From contig JAWQFM010000032.1 of assembly GCA_033442325.1 (NCBI GenBank), forward strand, positions 384,112 through 448,111: DNA of 64,000 nucleotides. The letters run 5' to 3'. Below are positions 20,606-34,868 of the stretch, in pieces. Each line of letters starts with the position of its first letter. Positions within the stretch are counted from its first letter, which is position 1. Both the position numbers and the translations under genes were made by a program. The notes beneath the pieces are model-generated. The model ran no database searches and was not told the origin of the DNA. It saw only the letters and a program-made list of their open reading frames with translations. The DNA is from Salpingoeca rosetta. Taxonomy: Eukaryota > Protista > Choanoflagellata.

Positions 20606-21147
20606 GCACGCACAAACACACAGGAAAAATCCGAACCGGCGAAAATTAGAGTAAATTTTGAACCAATTTTCTTATTCCACCCTAAAGTTAGCTTCTTGTG
20701 CGAAACCAGGCGAAAGCAGGCAAGACATTCTCATTCGCACAAACACACGAAGCAGACGAACAAGGACGACCGAGCAAGAAGCGAAACCGACACATCCACA
20801 GCACCACAGCAGTGAGGGACTTCGACAGCTCTGCTCTGAGGCCTCCTCCCTCTTCTTCTCCGTCTTCGTCTCCCTCCCCCATCTTTGGCATCACTCCCGT
20901 AGTCGTGACATCGATCGTCCTTGCTTCGCCCTTGCTGTTCACGTCAGGCAGGAAGCAGCCGCTCGCCCAGTGTTCAACGGTTCCATTGTTGCTGTTGAAT
21001 GTGAATGCAGCCCGTCACTGGTAACAACCCACCACAACCACAGCCACCACCCCGTCGCCGCCCACACCTTTCACCTCCGACCTTTCTCCTCCAGTGCACC
21101 ACCATCCCACCGCCAACGCCACACTGGTCCTCACCACACCATTGGGG

Positions 21148-22389
21148 ATGAGCAGGCGTCCGCCGATACAGACGGCGCCATCACGCAAGATGGTGTGTTT
21201 GCGTGTCCATGGATTTGCATGGTGTTCTGGGGTTTGCTTTGGGAGTGCACTCTGTGTGTTTTCGTTGCTGCCGTTTATTCGCTCGGGTGCACACCCGCTG
21301 CGTACGTGTGTGGTGCTTCCTCATCGGCCTCCACCCCTTGACCGCTGTCTCACCACTTTGCCCGACCTGTCAACAACACGCATCTGTCTTCTGCTGCTTC
21401 TTCTCGCTCTCTTTTGCTTTTTTTCCTATCCACTACGTTCCTTGCCTTGCATCTTTGTGCCTCAGGGACAAATCGTCAAATCCAGGCCACCACACGAGGC
21501 AGAAAGGCAGAAGCCAACATGGCGTGGCCTCGACCTCGAACGTGAGTGCTCACCGCGCCTGTGCTCTTTGTTGCTTGTCGTTTTTGACAGCACAGCGGTG
21601 GCGTGTTGTTGTGCGTGTGCACTGGTCGCATGGCGTCTGTTTATCCATATCACCTGTACTCTTCCTCACGCCGTTCATGCTCATGCCACAACCCTCACGC
21701 CACGGTTCACAGAAGCCGGGATCGTGGCCATCTCGCCGGCCCTGTTTCAGATGCAGCACCTGACCCACCTGTACTTGGCCCGCAACAGACTCACAACCAT
21801 CAGCCCGGAGATTCGACACCTGCGGGCGCTGAGGATTGTTGACCTCTCCTACAACCGCCTGCGGTCCATCCCGCCGGCCTTTGGCGACCTCACAGAGGTT
21901 GGTGTGGGTCTGTGTGCATGGTTGTTGTTTTTTTGTGTGTGTGCATGTGTGTGTGTGCGTTTGTTTATTTGTTTGTGTGCATGTGTGTGTGTGTGTGACG
22001 CATGCCATTGCCCCCGCGTGAAGCACGTCATGCCCACCTCTGTGTGTCAATCGAGCGAGCGCATGCATACCCTGTCGACAGTCCATGCTAACTCGAGAGC
22101 GTTTGCTGCGGTGGTTGTTTGCTTTGGCTCTTGCTGCTGTGTCTGTGTCGTCGTGATCGACGCTACGCCTGTGCACTTGCTTCTTTTGACGCCGCAGTTG
22201 AACGAGTGCATGCTGTCTGGCAACGAGCTGTCCACACTTCCCTTTGAGTTTGGCAAGCTGTACCAGATCAAGTTCCTTGCGCTGGACAACAACCCCTGGA
22301 CAGAACCCATTGCCTCGCACGTGGCAACCGGCACGGAGGCGCTCATGCAGTGGCTTCTCGACCAGGCTCCAAGTGCGTCACGTGTGTGC

Positions 22390-22426
<37 letters not shown>

Positions 22427-23849
22427 GTGTGCTCACATGCGTGTGCATTTATCCCCCCCCCCCACCACTTCAAGCCTTGTGCTCACATGTGTGTGTGTGT
22501 GTTTAGCTGGGCCGAGCCCGCCTGATCGGGAGTGGATTCAGCCAAAGGCCATTTCCCGGGCCGCACTCCAGCCCTACGAGAGAGGTGCAGCGGCATGCCT
22601 GCAACTGTGTGTCTGCATGTCGGCTTGTCTGCGTGGGTGTGCACGTGAGAGTGCGCATGGCTGACTCACGATGACGGCAGTTGTACTCCCTGGTTCGTCG
22701 CTCACTCTCTCGTTTTTCTTGCTCCTTGCCTGTCTTGTCTCACCTCTTTTTGCCTCTTGTCGAATGGGGGGGGGGCGCAGCCAAACGCGACAAAGTCAGC
22801 GTGTTTTGCTACAACATCCTCTGCGACAAATACGCGTCGCGCAACATGTTCAAGTGCGTAGCTTTCGGTCATTGTGATGTGTGCCTGTGTTGGGAGGGGA
22901 CAACGAGGTGGCCATGGTGACACGAACGCTGAGAGAAAGAAGGGGTTCATGCCTCGACCCTCTTTGCGCACACACGCCCACACCATTTTCGGCGACGAAG
23001 TGCCTCACAAGTCTGCTGCTGCCGATGTTGCATGTGTTGCCGTTGTTGCATGTGCCGCAGGTACTGTCCGTCGTGGGCGCTTGCGTGGGAGTACCGGAAA
23101 GGAAAGATCCTCACCGAGCTCGCAAACTCCAAATGCGGTGGGACATTGGAAGAAGGGGAAAGGAGTGTGCGTGCGTGTGTGTGTGTGTGTGTGAGGGTGT
23201 GTGTGTGTGTGTGTGTGTGTGAGGGTGTGTGTGTGTGTGTTGTGTGTGTGTGTGTGTGTGTGAGAGAGTGAGAGAGGATGTGCGTGTGCGTGTGCGTGTG
23301 TTAAATGCAACGAGGAGAAGTGGATATGTGCGGTGACGAGGTTTGTCGAGTGCAACATTGCCGAATGCCAAACCGATACGGGTCACCGCACAGCCACCAC
23401 ACTGTGCACAGTGATGCTTGCTTCACATGCCACTCACCTTCTCAACACATGTCTTTCTCTCTTTGTTCATTTGCTTGCTTGTTTGTTTGTTTGGTTGTTT
23501 GTTTGTTTGTTCGTTTATTTATTTGTTTGTTTGTTTGTTTGTTTTCTCGGCGCCCCTTGCTTGCCTCAGACATTCTGTGCCTGCAAGAGGTGTCCAAGTC
23601 TGAGTTTTACCAGTACTTTCTCGGGCAGCTGCAGAAGGAGGGCTACCACGGCGCCTTCAAGTCAGTCTCATGCTGATGTGCTCACACACTCGCATTCACT
23701 CTTGCACACAAACACACACATGCATATTCATAGATATACACACATGCACACACACACACACATGTGCATCATCATCTGTGGCACCCACCACCGTGATTCT
23801 TTGTTGGCTCATCGTTGTGTCTTGTCACATCTGCGTACGTTTGCACGTC

Positions 23850-28308: not shown

Positions 28309-29770
28309 TGTGTCTGTGTCTGTGTCTGTGTGTGTGTGTGTCTGTGTGTCTGTGTCTGTGTGTGTCTGTGTGTGTGTGTGTGTGCGTCTGTGTGTGTGTG
28401 TGTCTGTGTGGGCAGGTGTCTGTGTGTGTGTGTGTGTGTGTCTCTTTCTCTCTGTCTCTCTGTCTCTCTGTGTCCCTTTCTCTCTGTCTCTCTGTCTCTC
28501 TGTCTCTCTTCTGTCTCTCTGTCTCTCTGACCAATTCTTTGACCACCTCTGCCCACCCGTCTCTCCTCAGCCTCTGTCTTTGTCAATTTACCTCCTCTGC
28601 GTCACTTTGCTGTGCCGCAACTCACCCTACCCCTTTGCTGGACAGTTGATTCTGTTGCCCTCTTCTCCCTCCCCCCCCCCCCAAATGCACGCACTTTGAC
28701 CTCCTCCATCTCCTTCGTTTACCCACCCCCTGTGTGTCCTCTTTCCTTTCCATCGCTTCTTGCGTGGTGAATGCCTGACTCCACAACCGCATTGAATATG
28801 CGATGAGTACTGATTCTATTTGTTGTGCCCCATCCTTGCGTGCTTGTGTTACTATTGCCGTCGAATGTGCCTGCCCCTGTGCTTGGGCGTGCGCTTGTGT
28901 GCACCCTCCTCCTCCTCCTCCTCCTCCTCCTCCTCCTTCTCTTCCTCCTTCTTATTCTTCTTCCTGCATATGCCCATGCCCTTCCGTGTCTTGTTGTGCA
29001 AGCGTGATTCCCTGTCTTCCCCCCCCCTACACGCACACACACACGCACACACACACACGCACACACACTCACACGTACCTTTGCTGTTGTGATGTTGTGA
29101 CTCTCCCTACCCCCTGCCCCTTGACCCACCCCCCCCCCTCCTCTCGCAAACACCATCAGCGCCCATTGCGCATTGCAACCCCCCCCCCAACTTGACCCCA
29201 AATACAACGTGTCCATATCACTCAATTCTTATGAGCATTGTCGGTGGCGCTTGCCCCAAACAGCACTCGCACCCCATCACACATGCACGTGCACCCCATC
29301 ACACATGCACGTGCACCCCATCACACAGCACTCGCACCCCATCACACATGCACGTGCTACCAACAGCACATCGTGCCAGTGCCGCTTCACGGTTTACATT
29401 CATGTGTACGCTCATGTACTGTTTCGAGTAAGAGGAAACAAACAAGATGCTTATGACAGGGGAAGAACAGGAGAAAGAGGTATGCCATGACCATAAAGTC
29501 GCAGACTGTCACGTACCGTGGTGGCACATTACATAACACAAGCAAGGAAGCAAAGAAGCATCATAACAGACATGTAACACAACAACAACACCAGAGTTGA
29601 GGCTCCAAAACACATACAGACTTACAGACAGAATGCAACAGAATGCACGATCCTGTGACTGCTTCTGAGTTCCATCACAACCAACACGCAGGACGATAGG
29701 CGAAGGGGGTGTCCCGCACAATCATCATGATGCCACCACACTCAAGAGCGCGACGCAAACCCGTCTCAAC

Positions 29771-32440
29771 TCATCCAGGCATCCTGCAACGAGGAGGGCA
29801 GTTGGTCAGGGTGACATGGTCGTCGGCGCAAACGCACGAGCCAAGGTGCTGGCAGTCGATGTGGGTGAGCGGCCCAGCGTTATCGAGCTCAATGCGACCT
29901 GCAATGCTGGCGATGCGACCGAAGGTGATGGTGTGCAGGTTGTTGTTGCGCAGCACCAGGTCACCGTCAATGGCCACCAACCCGCCAAAGTCGATTCGCG
30001 TGATGGCGTTGTTGGAGAGGTCGAGCGTGCCGGCGATCGTGGAGGGCGCGGGTGTGCTGAAGGTGACGCTGGTGATGGCATTGTCGGTGGCATGCACACT
30101 GCCACGCACGTCTGTGAGCTGTGCAAAGTGCAGCTGCGTCAGCCTGTTGTCGGCAAGAAACATGCTGCCGTCAACACGACGCAGGCCGTCAAAGTCAATG
30201 CTGGTGAGGTTGTTGCTGAACAGGTACACACTACCGCCAATGGAGGTGATGGGTGCAAAGCTGATGGTGGAGAGCGCCGTGTCATATATGTCAAGATAGC
30301 CACCAATGCGCTCGAGCTGCCCAAAGTCAATGCCGGTCAACTTGACGCCTGGGAGGTGCAGCCCACCCGAGATACTCAGCAGGGACGCAAAGTCAATGCG
30401 CTGGAGGTTGCTGTTCCCTTGCAGGTTGACGTATCCGCTCACATGCGTGACCGCGCCAAACGTGATGCTGGCAAGGTCGTTGTTCACCAGATCCACGCTC
30501 CTCTTCACGTACTTGATGCGCGTGCCAAAGTCAACTGCGCGCATGCTGCCTGAGGTCAGGTCAAGCCCGCCCAACATGCCGTCGTTGAGAGTGGTGGCCG
30601 CTGCGTCCGTGATGTGGATGTGCGCCCCCACGTCTGCGAGTTCGCCAAACGCGAGCGCCTGCAGTGGATTGCCGGTCAGGTCAACCTCGCCCCCGATCAT
30701 GGAGAGGGACTGAAAGTCGACGGTGGTGATGCTGTTGCTGCTGATGCTCAGCCACTGCCCGACGTGTGCGAGGGACCCAAAGTCCACTGCCGTTAGCATG
30801 GCGTTGCTGCCCACCTCAACACAGCCCAGGACCGTGCTCACGTTGCGAAAGCTCAATGACGGTAGCGACGTGCCACGAACAACGACGCTGCCAGCCACGG
30901 TGTGCAGGGCGCCAACGTCCACCTCTGCCAGCGCGTTGGCACAGCAGATGACAATGTCACCGCCAACCATGGTGACCTGGTTGAACGTGAGCGACACCAA
31001 CGCACTCGTGCCAGTGCCGGGGACAGAGGTGCTGGTAGCAGAGGGACGTCGTGTCTTGTGGATGCCATCATGTGCTGATGCCGTTGTTGGTGTTGGTGGT
31101 GTTGGTGTTGGTGTTGTTGGTGTTGGTGGTGTTGGTGTTAGTGTTGTTGTGGTTGGTGTGGGTGTTGTTGTGGTTGGTGTGGGTGCGAGTCGTGGAAGGG
31201 CACGCGTGCTGGCTGTGGTAGGGTTGTGATTATCGCCATCATCTGGATCCCAGGACGTATCGACCGTGTTATCATCGTCAATACCATTGTCTGTGCCTGC
31301 GTCTGCGCTATTGTCCTCACCCGCATCAGCAGCGGTGTTGGTGTTGAAGCTGTCGCTGAGGGTGTTATCGTTGTCCAAGCTGCCGCTACCGTGAAAGCCG
31401 GGAACGTGCGCAAGCCATGCCCCACCGTGGCCGTGGCTGTGGCCTTGATCAGCCCCACCACCCCCACCATGCCCATCGTCGCCGCCGCCACCGCCTTCGC
31501 TGGCACCTTGAGTGTCAAACTGACGATAGGCGTCAAGCGCAGCGCCCGTCACAACGACGCTCCCGCCAATAGAGGTGATGGACCCAAAGTCCACCGCTGT
31601 CACACTGCTGTCGACGTACACATCCCCAAGCACACGCTGCAGGTGCGCAAACTCCGGACACGCAGCGTTGAGGAACACGGACGAGGCTTCCACCACGCCT
31701 TGCGACGCGAACAGGGCACGGCTCTGCTGGCACGCGCAGTCAAGGACAGGGGGTGTGCGCGCGCTTTGCGAGGTGGCAACATGCACGCCAACGCCAATGC
31801 TGCCAGCAACGACAACCATTGTGATGACCACCGCTGCCAGGACGCACGGGCGGGTGGCAGCCCACGTCGGAGACTTCTGGCGCGACGAGAACTGCGACGG
31901 GAACAGCGATGATGGTGGTGACGATGATGGTGGTGGTGGTGGTGGTGGTGGTGTTTCTGCTGCTGATAATGGTGTCGCTGCTGTTGTCGATGCTGACGCT
32001 CGGTGTGGTGATGGCTGTGGTATTGCTGCTGTTGTCGATGCACGTGCTTGTGCTGGGGAGTGACGTGATCGCTGGGACTGTGCTGACAGCATTGTTGGTG
32101 GCGATGACGGGGAGCGAGTAGTACGTGAGGAGGTCAGAATCGACCACAGGCGAAACGACGTCCGTGCTGTGCGCGTGGTGCTCACACTTCTACGCGTGGT
32201 GGACGCTGTTGCTGCTGTTGCTGAGGCTGTTGCTGTTGATGGTGATGATGACGTCGGTGCATCCTGTTGAAAGATGCTTGCGGGCAAGTCTGATCCGTAA
32301 GCAGCAAACACGCCCAGATCGCTCTCAGACATGCCTGTGGAAAAGTCCAGCTGTGCAATGTACGTGTCGTATGACTCCTTTGGTGCTGCGTCAACATCCG
32401 TCTCGCCAAACCCTTCCAGCTCAACCATGTTGCCCAGCTA

Positions 32441-32515
<75 letters not shown>

Positions 32516-34309
32516 AAGAGGGAGTTGGTGAGGGTGCTCTGGATGGATCCACAAGAAGAGAGCGCAGCTGCAAGCAATCCGGCGTGTGCAAACTGTCAAG
32601 ATAGACGTACAAATGCGCACACACGCACACATACACACCACAAACAACAGCACGCACATACAAGGAAACACACTCACACGCACACAACGCGCAAGCCTGT
32701 TTGCGTTTGCTTGAAAGTGCACGCATAGTCATTCGCACCTCACAGGACATGGTTTCGCTGTGTTCTTGCAAGTGTGCAATAACGCCGAGAAGCGTGGTGC
32801 ACGGCTGTGAGAGCCGCTGTCCATCCATCATGTACAGGCCCCGCGGGTCGCGGTGGAGGGTGTGGTGCTCGATGCGATGAGGTGTCACCGCCTGATTCGC
32901 ACAACACCATGCGTGTGTTTGTGTTTGTGTATGTGTGGGTGTGTGAGTGATATCAGGACGGTGTCGACGCAAGCTGAGGTGTCTTCTTGCCGCCACATGA
33001 CAGACACACACATACAGAAACACACACACATACACACACGCATACACACGCATACACACGCGCATACACATGCATGCACATACACATGCAAGTACACATA
33101 CACATGCAAGTACACATGCCAGCACACTTACATACACAAGCAACTGACCAGGGTGATGATGGGCTCTTCACTGCTTGGGTGCTCGCGAATGATAAAGGCG
33201 CCGGGTTGTGGTCGAATCGTTATGAGTCGCAGCTCTGCTTCATCGCACGACATGGAGGGAAGCAGGGGTAGGGAGAAGGGGCCCGGTACATACGCGGGTT
33301 CGCTTTGCACACACGCTGCCGCTGCTGCGCGTGGCGCGACAATTTGCTCCTGCCGATGTTTCAAGTGCTGCTGGTGTTGTTGTTGCTCCGGCTGGGCACG
33401 AGGAAGCTGCAGTTGCGAGTGCCCATGTGCCTCTTGTGGCAGACACTGCTGTTGACGTTGTAGATGTGGTTGACGGTGGTGGCGCTCCTCTTGCGTTCCT
33501 TGTTGCGTTCCTTGTTGCGTTCCTTGTTGTGTTCCTTGTTGCGTTCCTTGTTGTGTTCCTTGTTGTGTTCCTTGTTGTGTTCCTTGTTGTGTTCCTTGTT
33601 GCTGTGCTTCGTTCACCAACAGGCCATGTTCCGCCAGCCCACCAACTGCCAGCCCTTCATCGTCCTCGCCTTGATCCTGCAGCAAGCGCTGCTGCTGCTG
33701 TTGCTGGTCTTGCAGTAGGTACTTTTGTTGCTGTTGCTGTTGGTGGTGTGTGTGGACCACACCGTATCCGACGTCACTCACGTTGCTCAGGCCGCTCACG
33801 CCGCTTTCAGCACTGCTTCCAAGAGGGTAGAAGAAGTGGTTGCGGGGAGGGTAGTTGAAGTAGTGGTTGGCATCCACATGCTGCTGTTGGGCCTGACCAA
33901 TGGCAAGGTGCGGTTGGGCATGGGAAGGGGGTGGCTGTTGATTGCCATCTCTGGCACGCGCGCTGCCTGAGTGCTGTGACTTGAAGGCAGCACCAACTTG
34001 CACGCATCCGCTCTGCTGCTGCTTCAGCTCCAAGAACTCCATCGTGCTGGGATTTGCGTGCTTGCTCGTGTCAGGTGGTGTGTCCACCTCTGCCTGTCCG
34101 ATCGCGGTGTCCTCGATGTCGCCTGTACCAGCGTGCAGAGCGTGCCTTGCTTCGTCGCATCCGAGAGCCTCGACGTAGGTTTCGAGGGTCTGCGGAAGCG
34201 GGTGGTTGGTGTCGTTGTTGCCGTTCCCATATGCTTCTATTGCCAAGAGTCGTTCAGCAGCAAGTGGTGACTTGCAAGCCGCAAAGCCATCCAAGCTCTC
34301 GCCTGACAT
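29771..34309 (-). CDS. Predicted type II membrane protein: Q-rich N-terminus - SH2 - S/T-rich linker - TM - extracellular receptor-L-domain/Ecm33-like repeats (exons 34309-33149, 32891-32739, 32437-29771)
   Basis: SH2 motifs MSCDEAELRL..PGAFIIREH..PIITL|AVTPHRIEHHTLH..GLYMMDG..TTLLGVIAHL, joined by phase-0 GT-AG introns to the 885-aa ORF. TM CVLAAVVITMVVVAGSIGVGVHV at about 31780-31845. About 22-aa repeats of type xDFxxLxxIGGxLxLxxNxLxx. The exon 2-3 junction is inferred. Confidence 0.7.
33490..33602 (-). repeat. 12-bp coding minisatellite encoding about 9 copies of QQGT
   Basis: Repeated ccttgttgcgtt/ccttgttgtgtt on the + strand. Confidence 0.9.
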
Positions 34310-34525
34310 CTAGGCCCGATTGTCTGTGTATGTATGAAATGCTCTGGTTGCGCTGTACCAAGAGCTAAAGGAGAACGGGCTTTCGAAAGACTCAAAGAGG
34401 ACAATGTAGGTCAAATCAAACGCCCAGCAAGAAAGAGTGTGTGTGAGTGTGTGCGAGTGTGTGTTGGATATGAAAGTGCTGTGCTGACACGGTGTTGAAT
34501 GAGAGTGAATGAGCACCCTGTGTGA

Positions 34526-34562
<37 letters not shown>

Positions 34563-34868
34563 CTTGGAAGCGAGAATGGGTGCAGGTTATCGCACGCCCT
34601 GCGCGCTGCATCTGCATTATGACCACGGCAGCAACCAACCAAGCAACTAACCCAATCCTGCTCGTTTTCCTTGCGTGACTGTCTGGCCGGTCTGACTTGT
34701 TCCAAGGTCTGAAAGCTGACGATGATGTCATCCGTGTGTGATTTTTCGTGGGAGAAGTTGCAAATTGTCGTCTCATCGTGCGGGTTCGCTGGTAGGCTGG
34801 CTTATTGTGCAAATGACACTTTCGCGCAGACCTGCATCATACCCTCGAGAAGGAGAGACCTCACAGGG

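What the first reader, a model, noticed from the sequence alone, without database searches (positions are those of the whole stretch)
29771..34309. Inverted (type II) receptor with a cytosolic SH2 domain and an extracellular L-domain-like solenoid
Seen: three ORF pieces that the track lists separately join through two phase-0 GT-AG introns. The result is one protein with no signal peptide, an SH2 domain that keeps the beta-B Arg (FIIREH for FLVRES), a single TM preceded by basic residues, and about 15 repeats of roughly 22 aa at the C-terminus. Known: the beta-B5 Arg binds phosphotyrosine, and L-domain solenoids are ligand-binding modules in EGFR/insulin receptors and fungal Ecm33. Kinase-less TM+SH2 proteins have been reported in choanoflagellates, but I do not recognise this N-in SH2 / C-out L-domain layout. 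Inference: a non-catalytic receptor that reads pTyr inside the cell and binds ligand outside.
Basis: partly seen in the sequence, partly recalled or inferred. Interest (0 to 1): 0.8.

Follow-up and report, generated by a model that had tools for sequence, protein, structure and literature searches.

The report
SH2-bearing type II LRR receptor gene
A choanoflagellate gene that public protein sets lack is transcribed as one spliced mRNA for a single-pass membrane protein with a phosphotyrosine-reading SH2 domain inside the cell and a leucine-rich-repeat rod outside. It is a TIR-less member of a small, undescribed family of "inverted" receptors in close relatives of animals.

Summary
The result is one 1,326-residue protein.

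- **SH2 domain:** the domain split over exons 1 and 2 is real but divergent. It scores 21.8 bits in Pfam against a cut-off of 21. A family profile hits ZAP-70/SYK SH2 at 2e-10. The AlphaFold model matches only SH2 structures. The beta-B5 Arg is present, but alpha-A2 is Cys.
- **Membrane topology:** there is one hydrophobic segment (636-658), no signal peptide, and more basic residues on the N-side.
- **C-terminal part:** a confidently predicted Cys-capped solenoid (pLDDT 91) of about 17 repeats of 22 residues. It is LRR-type by fold and Recep_L_domain by Pfam. The same module sits behind signal peptides in secreted relatives.

The gene is not unique. Salpingoeca rosetta PTSG_03080 and PTSG_02597 are TIR-SH2-TM-solenoid, and a Microstomoeca roanoka protein is SH2-TM-solenoid. 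This copy lacks the TIR, has a Q-rich N-terminus and is absent from public protein sets. Earlier notes of this scan report TIR-bearing paralogues on other pieces of the same genome.

pTyr binding, ligand binding and the proposed phospho-dependent oligomerisation are inferred, not shown.

The parts
34310..34517 (-). 5' UTR (approximate transcript start)
   Evidence: Contigs reach 34471 (X4) and 34517 (X5). X20 depth is zero in 34532-34725. An in-frame stop lies just before the ATG.
33149..34309 (-). Exon 1 CDS, residues 1-387: Q-rich disordered N-terminus (1-340) and the N-half of the SH2
   Evidence: ORF and splice donor CTG|GTCAGT. Pfam finds no domain in 1-340, there is no usable Atlas hit for 1-110, and there is no similarity to the TIR of PTSG_02597.
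33491..33602 (-). 12-nt tandem repeat coding (QQGT)x9
   Evidence: TRF reports 9.3 copies with 96% matches.
33185..33187 (-). Codon CGC for Arg375, the beta-B5 Arg of the SH2 (GAFIIRE)
   Evidence: It aligns with the FLIR/FLLR Arg of PLC-gamma2 and ZAP-70 SH2. The register is G+5, as in GTFLVRES.
32892..33148 (-). Intron 1, 257 nt, GT..AG, phase 0, inside the SH2 after strand beta-C
   Evidence: The joint is seen in X20 raw reads and in contigs of X4, X5 and X12. PTSG_03080 has an intron at the same place.
32739..32891 (-). Exon 2, residues 388-438: C-half of the SH2
   Evidence: Atlas hits for this piece alone are SH2 clusters (score 0.91; 33 of 40 hits in the top hit's family set). The joined domain scores 21.8 bits in Pfam SH2.
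32438..32738 (-). Intron 2, 301 nt, GT..AG, phase 0; contains (CA)37
   Evidence: Three contigs have exactly 4 letters between 32739 and 32433. The relatives read ...MSC-x-L continuously across this junction.
29771..32437 (-). Exon 3 CDS, residues 439-1326 plus the stop codon
   Evidence: Open frame, with collinear contigs 31906 -> 29328.
32360..32371 (-). Acidic tyrosine motif YDTY (residues 461-464), 23 residues after the SH2
   Evidence: It aligns with EVIYDY of PTSG_03080 and EVVYDV of PTSG_02597. Phosphorylation is not shown.
31778..31846 (-). Single transmembrane segment, residues 636-658
   Evidence: This is the only Kyte-Doolittle 19-residue window at or above 1.6 in the protein (peak 2.62). 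Flank charges are +3/0 on the N-side and +1/-1 on the C-side.
31517..31777 (-). Extracellular N-cap (LDC...SRA..AS...C.EF) and first repeat
   Evidence: It aligns with the cap of PTSG_02597, PTSG_03080, the M. roanoka protein and the secreted B. monosierra P0001.
31007..31516 (-). 170-residue low-complexity insert (Gly/Asp/His, then Pro-Thr repeats) within the ectodomain
   Evidence: It is absent from all aligned relatives. It is retained in the mRNA, as X4 rec8 is collinear across it.
29855..31006 (-). Main beta-solenoid, about 16-17 repeats of 22-23 residues
   Evidence: AF2 gives pLDDT 91.4 and pTM 0.89. VIA Z is 26.4 to LIC11098 and 20.2 to 4fs7 at rmsd 4.0 A over 346 residues. Recep_L_domain scores 29.4 bits against a cut-off of 21.8.
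29774..29854 (-). C-terminal Cys-knot cap (C..LGSCVC....TNCPPRC)
   Evidence: The same cap ends P0001, P0005, P0006, P0010, P0011, P0032 and others.
29328..29770 (-). 3' UTR (end between 29328 and 29460)
   Evidence: Contigs end at 29328, and X20 molecules begin at 29460.

Best explanation
This is a real, expressed three-exon gene, most likely of Salpingoeca rosetta. It encodes a 1,326-residue single-pass type II membrane protein.

**Inside the cell:**
- a 340-residue Gln-rich disordered N-terminus;
- a divergent SH2 domain (about 349-434);
- a conserved acidic Tyr motif (YDTY, 461-464);
- a Ser/Thr/Pro-rich linker.

**Outside the cell:**
- a Cys-capped LRR/L-domain-type beta-solenoid of about 17 repeats of 22 residues;
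- a 170-residue acidic and Pro-Thr-rich insert that interrupts the solenoid.

The gene is a TIR-less paralogue of the choanoflagellate TIR-SH2-TM-solenoid proteins.

**Shown here:** the transcript, the domain identities, and the family relationship. The topology follows from those.

**Inferred:** it acts as a non-catalytic receptor or membrane adaptor. The solenoid binds an extracellular ligand. The SH2 docks onto phosphotyrosine, most plausibly the conserved YD motif of a neighbouring copy or of a TIR-bearing paralogue, in the way a STAT dimerises through its SH2 and a tyrosine just behind it. It could also dock onto a phosphorylated kinase. Tyrosine phosphorylation would then stabilise or remodel receptor clusters.
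For: - **One spliced mRNA:** exon-exon contigs from three studies and stranded reads from a fourth. Both junctions are phase-0 GT-AG.
- **SH2, by sequence:** the joined domain scores 21.8 bits in Pfam PF00017 against a cut-off of 21, E 2e-4, profile positions 6-68 of 77. Each half alone draws SH2 clusters in the Atlas. A profile of the four family SH2s hits ZAP-70/SYK at 1.9e-10, and all 60 listed PDB hits are SH2 proteins.
- **SH2, by fold:** the AF2 model has pLDDT 84.5 with the alpha-beta-beta-beta-alpha order. The 50 best Foldseek hits are all SH2, with TM 0.59-0.74.
- **Key SH2 residues:** Arg375 is in the beta-B5 register and His at beta-D4.
- **Topology:** one TM segment, no N-terminal hydrophobic stretch, positive-inside flanks. 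The same capped solenoid follows signal peptides in P0001, P0006, P0010, P0022 and P0032. Cys caps and a Pro-Thr-rich stretch suit an extracellular location.
- **Solenoid:**
- **Family:** PTSG_03080, PTSG_02597 and M. roanoka P017059 share SH2, TM, N-cap, solenoid and C-cap. The intron position inside the SH2 is shared with PTSG_03080.
- **Tyr motif:** a YD motif is conserved 16-30 residues after the SH2 in three of the four proteins.
Against: - No experiment shows pTyr binding, phosphorylation of the YD motif, surface location or any ligand.
- The SH2 is barely over Pfam's cut-off and lacks the alpha-A2 Arg (Cys357).
- Two relatives (PTSG_03080 with GDFLLWRR, M. roanoka with GSFFLHYQR) lack an Arg in the beta-B5 register. 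The family's SH2 may therefore not always read pTyr.
- The M. roanoka protein has no aligned YD motif.
- The neighbouring receptor kinase has a Ser/Thr-type catalytic loop (HRDLKSGN). It is barely covered in the one raw RNA run, so it is a poor candidate for a dedicated pTyr writer.
- The long low-complexity N-terminus and the ectodomain insert could mean relaxed constraint.
- Plasma-membrane versus internal-membrane residence is not determined.
Confidence: 0.72

Rival explanations
1. The architecture is as described, but the SH2 is a degenerate, phosphotyrosine-independent interaction or scaffold module. The protein would then not read pTyr at all.
For: Alpha-A2 Arg is Cys. The Pfam score is only 0.8 bits over the cut-off. 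Two of three relatives lack an Arg in the beta-B5 register. The best Foldseek hit is the RasGAP C-SH2, which from my own recollection binds pTyr atypically.
Against: This copy and PTSG_02597 keep the beta-B5 Arg and the beta-D4 His. An acidic YD motif, the usual look of a tyrosine-kinase site, is conserved just after the SH2. From my own knowledge, many working SH2 domains lack the alpha-A2 Arg.
Confidence: 0.2
2. It is mainly a surface adhesion or coat protein. The LRR rod with its mucin-like insert would mediate cell-cell, cell-bacterium or cell-substrate contact. The cytosolic part would only anchor or sort it, and it would not transmit a signal.
For: Many relatives of the ectodomain are secreted or surface proteins with no cytosolic domain. 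The Pro-Thr-rich and acidic insert resembles a stalk.
Against: The SH2, and in the paralogues the TIR plus SH2, are signalling domains. They are kept together with the ectodomain in at least two genera.
Confidence: 0.12
3. Two separate products: a soluble SH2 protein ending after exon 2 (alternative acceptor near 32567) and a separately transcribed TM-solenoid protein starting at Met 32428.
For: An ATG lies 9 nt into exon 3. Low-depth contigs over intron 2 (depth 3.6 and 2.3, against 42.5 and 493 for the spliced form) show a few unspliced molecules.
Against: Three independent contigs join exon 2 to 32437. No joint to 32567 was reported. Contig depths of the junction contig and the exon 3 contigs are alike. 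The relatives carry the same parts in one uninterrupted protein.
Confidence: 0.03

Closest known systems
Salpingoeca rosetta PTSG_03080 (XP_004995670, UniProt F2U468) and PTSG_02597 (XP_004996095, F2U2R8)
   Same: Same order of SH2, acidic YD motif, single TM, LDC...C.EF N-cap, 22-residue repeat solenoid and C-terminal Cys knot. The SH2 is 31-32% identical, with phmmer E 4e-11 and 6e-10. PTSG_03080 has an intron at the same place in the SH2.
   Different: Both carry an N-terminal TIR domain (TIR_2 at 26.6 and 24.6 bits, just below Pfam's cut-off of 28; the PTSG_02597 TIR model scores 21.5 against 21.3). This gene has a Q-rich region with no TIR. It also has a 170-residue ectodomain insert and is missing from public protein sets.
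Microstomoeca roanoka EP00043_P017059 (transcriptome protein, 670 aa)
   Same: SH2-TM-capped solenoid without a TIR, which is the same layout as here.
   Different: It has a short N-terminus, no Arg in the beta-B5 register, no aligned YD motif and no ectodomain insert.
Choanoeca perplexa protocadherin-TM-SH2 protein (Richter et al. 2018, PMC6040629)
   Same: [quoted passage not shown]
   Different: By the order given in the paper the SH2 follows the TM, which is the opposite orientation. The ectodomain is also different. That paper lists TIR+SH2 combinations only among proteins without a TM.
Toll-like receptors and other LRR single-pass receptors (LRIG1, LINGO-1, LGR4, plant receptor-like proteins)
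   Same: An extracellular LRR-type solenoid on a single-pass membrane protein. Structural Z is 19.6-21.6 to Toll5A, LGR4, LINGO-1 and LRIG1 ectodomains.
   Different: Those are type I (N-out), with TIR, kinase or no cytosolic domain. Here the order is reversed and the cytosolic module is an SH2.
Receptor L domain (PF01030; EGFR and insulin receptor L1/L2, fungal Ecm33/Sps2)
   Same: The repeat pattern L..I.F..L..IGG.L.L..N passes the Pfam cut-off (29.4 against 21.8 bits, summed over weak stretches). UniProt names S. rosetta paralogues 'Receptor L-domain domain-containing protein'.
   Different: No single stretch is significant on its own. The rod has about 17 turns; from my own recollection an L domain has far fewer. 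No EGFR or insulin receptor chain is among the 50 best structural matches.
STAT proteins (SH2 followed closely by the phosphorylated tyrosine)
   Same: An SH2 with a conserved tyrosine a few tens of residues downstream. From established knowledge, this geometry in STATs drives reciprocal SH2-pTyr dimerisation.
   Different: There is no homology beyond the SH2 fold. The protein is membrane-bound, has no DNA-binding domain, and its phosphorylation is untested. This is an analogy for mechanism only.

Membership tests
SH2 domain (PF00017) | Sequence match above the curated threshold across the domain | tested here: met
   The joined 89-residue domain scores 21.8 bits against a cut-off of 21, E 2e-4, profile positions 6-68 of 77. 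The family profile hits ZAP-70/SYK at 1.9e-10. The margin is narrow for the single sequence.
SH2 domain (PF00017) | SH2 fold (alpha-A, central beta-sheet B-C-D, alpha-B) | tested here: met
   The AF2 model has pLDDT 84.5 with H11-20, E28-32, E39-46, E49-57, E63-65 and H77-87. The 50 best Foldseek PDB hits are all SH2, with TM 0.59-0.74 and rmsd 2.2-4.1 A.
SH2 domain (PF00017) | Beta-B5 Arg of the FLVR motif | tested here: met
   GAFIIRE places Arg375 at G+5. It aligns with the Arg of PLC-gamma2 and ZAP-70.
SH2 domain (PF00017) | Alpha-A2 Arg (second phosphate ligand in most SH2 domains) | tested here: not met
   MSCDEAE aligns with LSRGEAE of PLC-gamma2, so Cys357 stands in place of the Arg. 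This residue is not universal among working SH2 domains (from my own knowledge).
SH2 domain (PF00017) | Binding of phosphotyrosine peptides | not testable with these tools
   This needs recombinant protein.
Type II (N-in, C-out) single-pass membrane protein | One TM segment, no cleavable signal peptide, positive-inside flanks | tested here: met
   Only residues 636-658 exceed the hydropathy threshold. The highest 9-residue-window hydropathy within the first 40 residues is only 1.48. Flanks are +3/0 (N-side) against +1/-1 (C-side). No dedicated predictor such as DeepTMHMM or SignalP was available.
Type II (N-in, C-out) single-pass membrane protein | C-terminal domain of an extracellular kind, N-terminal domain of a cytosolic kind | tested here: met
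   The capped solenoid follows signal peptides in secreted relatives. SH2, and TIR in the paralogues, are cytosolic domains (established knowledge).
LRR clan solenoid / Receptor L domain (PF01030) | Pfam threshold | tested here: met
   Recep_L_domain scores 29.4 bits against 21.8 for residues 905-1326, but no single stretch is significant. LRR_5, LRR_8, LRR_4 and LRR_1 are all below their cut-offs.
LRR clan solenoid / Receptor L domain (PF01030) | Right-handed beta-solenoid of short repeats | tested here: met
   pLDDT is 91.4 and pTM 0.89. Z is 26.4 to LIC11098, 23.8 to InlJ and 20.2 to BspA-type 4fs7 at rmsd 4.0 A over 346 residues.
Choanoflagellate TIR-SH2-TM-solenoid ('inverted Toll-like') proteins | N-terminal TIR domain | tested here: not met
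   Pfam finds no family in exon 1 at E up to 1. BLASTP against the PTSG_02597 N-terminus finds nothing. The Atlas gives no usable hit.
Choanoflagellate TIR-SH2-TM-solenoid ('inverted Toll-like') proteins | Homologous SH2, TM, N-cap, solenoid and C-cap in the same order | tested here: met
   plus the shared intron position.

The most novel reading that the evidence does not exclude
Choanoflagellates have a lineage-specific class of reversed-topology LRR receptors. Their cytosolic SH2 plus adjacent YD tyrosine would form a STAT-like, phosphorylation-driven self-association module at the membrane. This TIR-less copy would heteromerise with the TIR-bearing paralogues through SH2-pTyr contacts. It would act as a co-receptor or a decoy that tunes their output. 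That would be a coupling of pTyr and TIR signalling with no counterpart in animals.
Probability: 0.2. Interest if true: 0.8.

Novelty: new variant of a known kind. Interest (0 to 1): 0.6.

Why it matters
Phosphotyrosine signalling expanded before animals arose. How its readers were wired to the cell surface in unicellular relatives is largely unknown.

In this family an SH2 domain is built directly into a kinase-less receptor, in the opposite orientation to animal LRR receptors. In sister genes it sits next to a TIR domain. That offers a way to test how pTyr signalling and innate-immunity-type signalling were combined in the closest relatives of animals.

This copy is useful in two ways. It is expressed yet absent from public protein sets. 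It is also a natural TIR-less variant that separates the SH2 function from the TIR function. S. rosetta is genetically tractable (from my own knowledge), so knockouts and R375K alleles should be feasible.

Tried and rejected
- **Pfam on the separate exon pieces.** The SH2 was not called (N-half 11.9 bits, E 0.25; C-half nothing), and PDB phmmer on the halves gave nothing useful. The full spliced protein was never sent to a tool and was handled only inside scripts.
- **Word searches.** The search with all of exon 3 found nothing because low-complexity words filled the candidate list. Restricting it to the solenoid gave four hits. The search with exon 1 gave only chance hits.
- **TIR remnant or other domain in residues 1-340.** None found.
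- **The neighbouring LRR kinase as a dedicated pTyr writer.** Its catalytic loop is Ser/Thr/TKL-type and it has almost no reads in X20. I do not rely on it.
- **Odd 'joints' in read laying.** The joints 32227-33366 and 33387-33725 carry foreign letters and lie in CAG/Gln repeats. I read them as cross-mapping from other Gln-rich genes, not as splicing.
- **Exact look-up of a window ORF to name the assembly.** It failed. The species assignment therefore rests on four indirect points:
  - composition (4-mer correlation 0.94-0.95, same (CA)n density);
  - an LRR-kinase paralogue 80% identical at nucleotide level;
  - the identity of the nearest relatives;
  - earlier notes of this scan.
- **Manning et al. 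2008 (PMC2453073).** The paper is not held, so I could not check whether it reports TM+SH2 proteins.


Full report
**1. Observation**

On the minus strand three open pieces lie in series: 34309-33149, 32891-32739 and 32437-29771. Each is a multiple of three. The two gaps start with GT and end with AG, so the join is phase 0 and gives one ORF of 1,326 residues. An in-frame stop lies directly before the ATG at 34309.

RNA data settle the splicing.
- A stranded raw RNA-seq run (X20) covers the locus continuously from about 29460 to about 34400. Its first mates lie on the plus strand, which for the usual stranded libraries means a minus-strand RNA.
- X20 shows the 257-nt skip with CT..AC ends, which is GT..AG on the minus strand.
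- Logan contigs from three other studies (X4 rec9, X5 rec15, X12 rec5) each run from exon 1 into exon 2, and from exon 2 into exon 3.
- Between 32739 and 32433 these contigs hold exactly four letters. These are 32437-32434, which the tool hid because they touch the masked (CA)37 repeat. Only the acceptor at 32437 fits. The alternative acceptor near 32567 would add about 130 letters, and no such joint was reported.
- A 2.6-kb contig (X4 rec8) runs collinearly from 31906 to 29328. Exon 3 therefore has no further intron, and its odd low-complexity insert is part of the mRNA.
- Contig depths on either side of the short masked repeats are alike. A few unspliced molecules exist over intron 2 (depth 2-4 against 42-493).

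**2. The SH2 domain**

The domain is split by intron 1, so the pieces alone gave only a weak Pfam hit for the N-half (11.9 bits, profile positions 5-32) and nothing in the PDB. Each half alone did draw SH2 clusters in the ESM Atlas (0.88 and 0.91).

- It passes Pfam's SH2 threshold narrowly: 21.8 against 21 bits, E 2e-4, profile positions 6-68 of 77, running across the exon junction.
- All eight weak PDB hits are SH2-carrying proteins: PLC-gamma2 (aligned to its C-SH2), ZAP-70 and FRK.
- A profile of this domain with its three relatives hits ZAP-70 and SYK at about 2e-10. All 60 listed PDB hits are SH2 proteins.
- The AlphaFold model (pLDDT 84.5) has the SH2 order of helices and strands. Its 50 best Foldseek matches are all SH2 domains, with TM 0.59-0.74.
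- Arg375 (FIIRE) sits in the beta-B5 register and His at beta-D4. The alpha-A2 Arg is replaced by Cys.

**3. Membrane topology**

One segment (636-658) is the only hydrophobic stretch in the protein, and the N-terminus has none. The flanks carry +3/0 charges on the N-side and +1/-1 on the C-side.

The strongest argument comes from the relatives. The same C-terminal module, with its N-cap (LDC...SRA..AS...C.EF) and its terminal Cys knot, follows ordinary signal peptides in secreted proteins of Barroeca monosierra and in metagenomic proteins. The module therefore belongs outside the cell, and the SH2 inside.

**4. The ectodomain**

Residues 905-1326 fold with high confidence (pLDDT 91.4, pTM 0.89) into a beta-solenoid of 22-23-residue repeats.
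- *Structural matches:* these are LRR proteins. Z is 26.4 to Leptospira LIC11098, 23.8 to InlJ, and 19.6-21.6 to LRIG1, LGR4, LINGO-1 and Toll5A. The tightest fit is the BspA-type protein 4fs7, at rmsd 4.0 A over 346 residues.
- *Pfam:* it gives Recep_L_domain over threshold as a sum of weak stretches (29.4 against 21.8 bits), with LRR_5 and the other LRR models below threshold.
- *Reading:* 'L-domain-like' is a fair label, and 'LRR-type rod' is the safer one.
- *Insert:* a 170-residue Gly/Asp/His and Pro-Thr-rich stretch (746-915) splits the N-cap and first repeat from the rest. No aligned relative has it.

**5. Relatives**

The exhaustive search with the solenoid found 1,984 proteins at E up to 0.001. 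None was more than 43% identical. Together this means the gene's product is not in the public protein sets searched.

Among the hits listed by that search, three share the cytosolic part as well:
- S. rosetta PTSG_03080, which is TIR-SH2-TM-solenoid;
- S. rosetta PTSG_02597, which is TIR-SH2-TM-solenoid;
- Microstomoeca roanoka P017059, which is SH2-TM-solenoid.

PTSG_03080 has an intron at the same point of the SH2 as intron 1 here. Three of the four proteins share an acidic tyrosine motif 16-30 residues after the SH2: KESYDTY here, EVIYDY and EVVYDV in the two S. rosetta proteins.

Only this gene and PTSG_02597 keep an Arg in the beta-B5 register. This gene has no TIR.

**6. Organism**

The nearest relatives are S. 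rosetta and its close kin. Base composition and (CA)n density match S. rosetta loci. A second LRR-kinase gene in the window is 80% identical in nucleotides, apparently across intron sequence as well, to the one beside PTSG_02597.

Earlier notes of this scan call the genome S. rosetta. They report TIR-SH2-TM-solenoid genes on other pieces. I confirmed that architecture only for the two annotated proteins above.

**7. Mechanism**

*Shown:* one mRNA, a cytosolic SH2, a TM segment, and an extracellular capped LRR-type rod.

*Inferred:* the protein is a non-catalytic receptor or membrane adaptor. The rod binds something outside the cell. The SH2 binds phosphotyrosine inside, most plausibly the conserved YD tyrosine of another copy or of a TIR-bearing paralogue. 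An SH2 closely followed by its own tyrosine is the STAT arrangement, which drives reciprocal dimerisation.

The head-to-head neighbour (34722-39382) is an LRR receptor kinase. Its catalytic loop reads HRDLKSGN, which is Ser/Thr/TKL-type, and its first exon is almost silent in X20. I do not lean on it as the writer.

**8. Literature**

Richter et al. 2018 (PMC6040629) report a protocadherin-TM-SH2 protein in Choanoeca perplexa as unique. They list TIR+SH2 combinations among proteins lacking a TM.

Five full-text searches found no description of an SH2-TM-LRR or TIR-SH2-TM-LRR receptor. Manning et al. 2008 could not be read.

**9. Verdict**

The function is inferred. The gene is an unannotated, TIR-less member of a small, undescribed choanoflagellate family, so I class it as a new variant built from known parts.

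Noticed in passing
window 34722-39382 (+): The head-to-head neighbour, 413 bp from the ATG, is an LRR_8 ectodomain-TM-kinase receptor. Its catalytic loop reads HVH|RDLKSGN across an intron, which is the Ser/Thr/TKL type rather than the Tyr-kinase type. It has no TIR. X20 has almost no reads on its first 175 nt.
   Followed up: partly
window 47619-52355 (+); L002 18316-19885: A second LRR-TM-kinase gene is 80% identical in nucleotides over 1.5 kb, apparently with intron sequence included, to the S. rosetta LRR-kinase gene that lies 2.5 kb downstream of PTSG_02597. The two are recent paralogues, and in both cases a receptor kinase sits beside an SH2-solenoid gene.
   Followed up: partly
window 21094-22506 (+), 44141-46576 (-), 58298-60745 (+): The window also holds a third LRR ORF, a three-domain multicopper oxidase, and a long TPR array ending in a PH domain. 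It is rich in receptor-like genes.
   Followed up: no
window 33491-33602 (-): A 12-nt tandem repeat codes (QQGT)x9 at 96% identity. RNA reads carry C>T differences at 33506 and 33518. This is probably repeat-unit or allele variation, or cross-mapping.
   Followed up: no
P0015 (S. rosetta PTSG_11196, 1445 aa): Another relative of the solenoid has an N-terminal hydrophobic stretch that looks like a signal peptide, a VWA domain, a hydrophobic segment near residue 837, and then the solenoid. The ectodomain module is combined with several different partners in S. rosetta.
   Followed up: no
window 29100-29487 (+): Reads of the opposite orientation (first mate on minus) cover 29100-29487. A convergent neighbour transcript therefore ends close to, or overlaps, the 3' end of this gene.
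   Followed up: no
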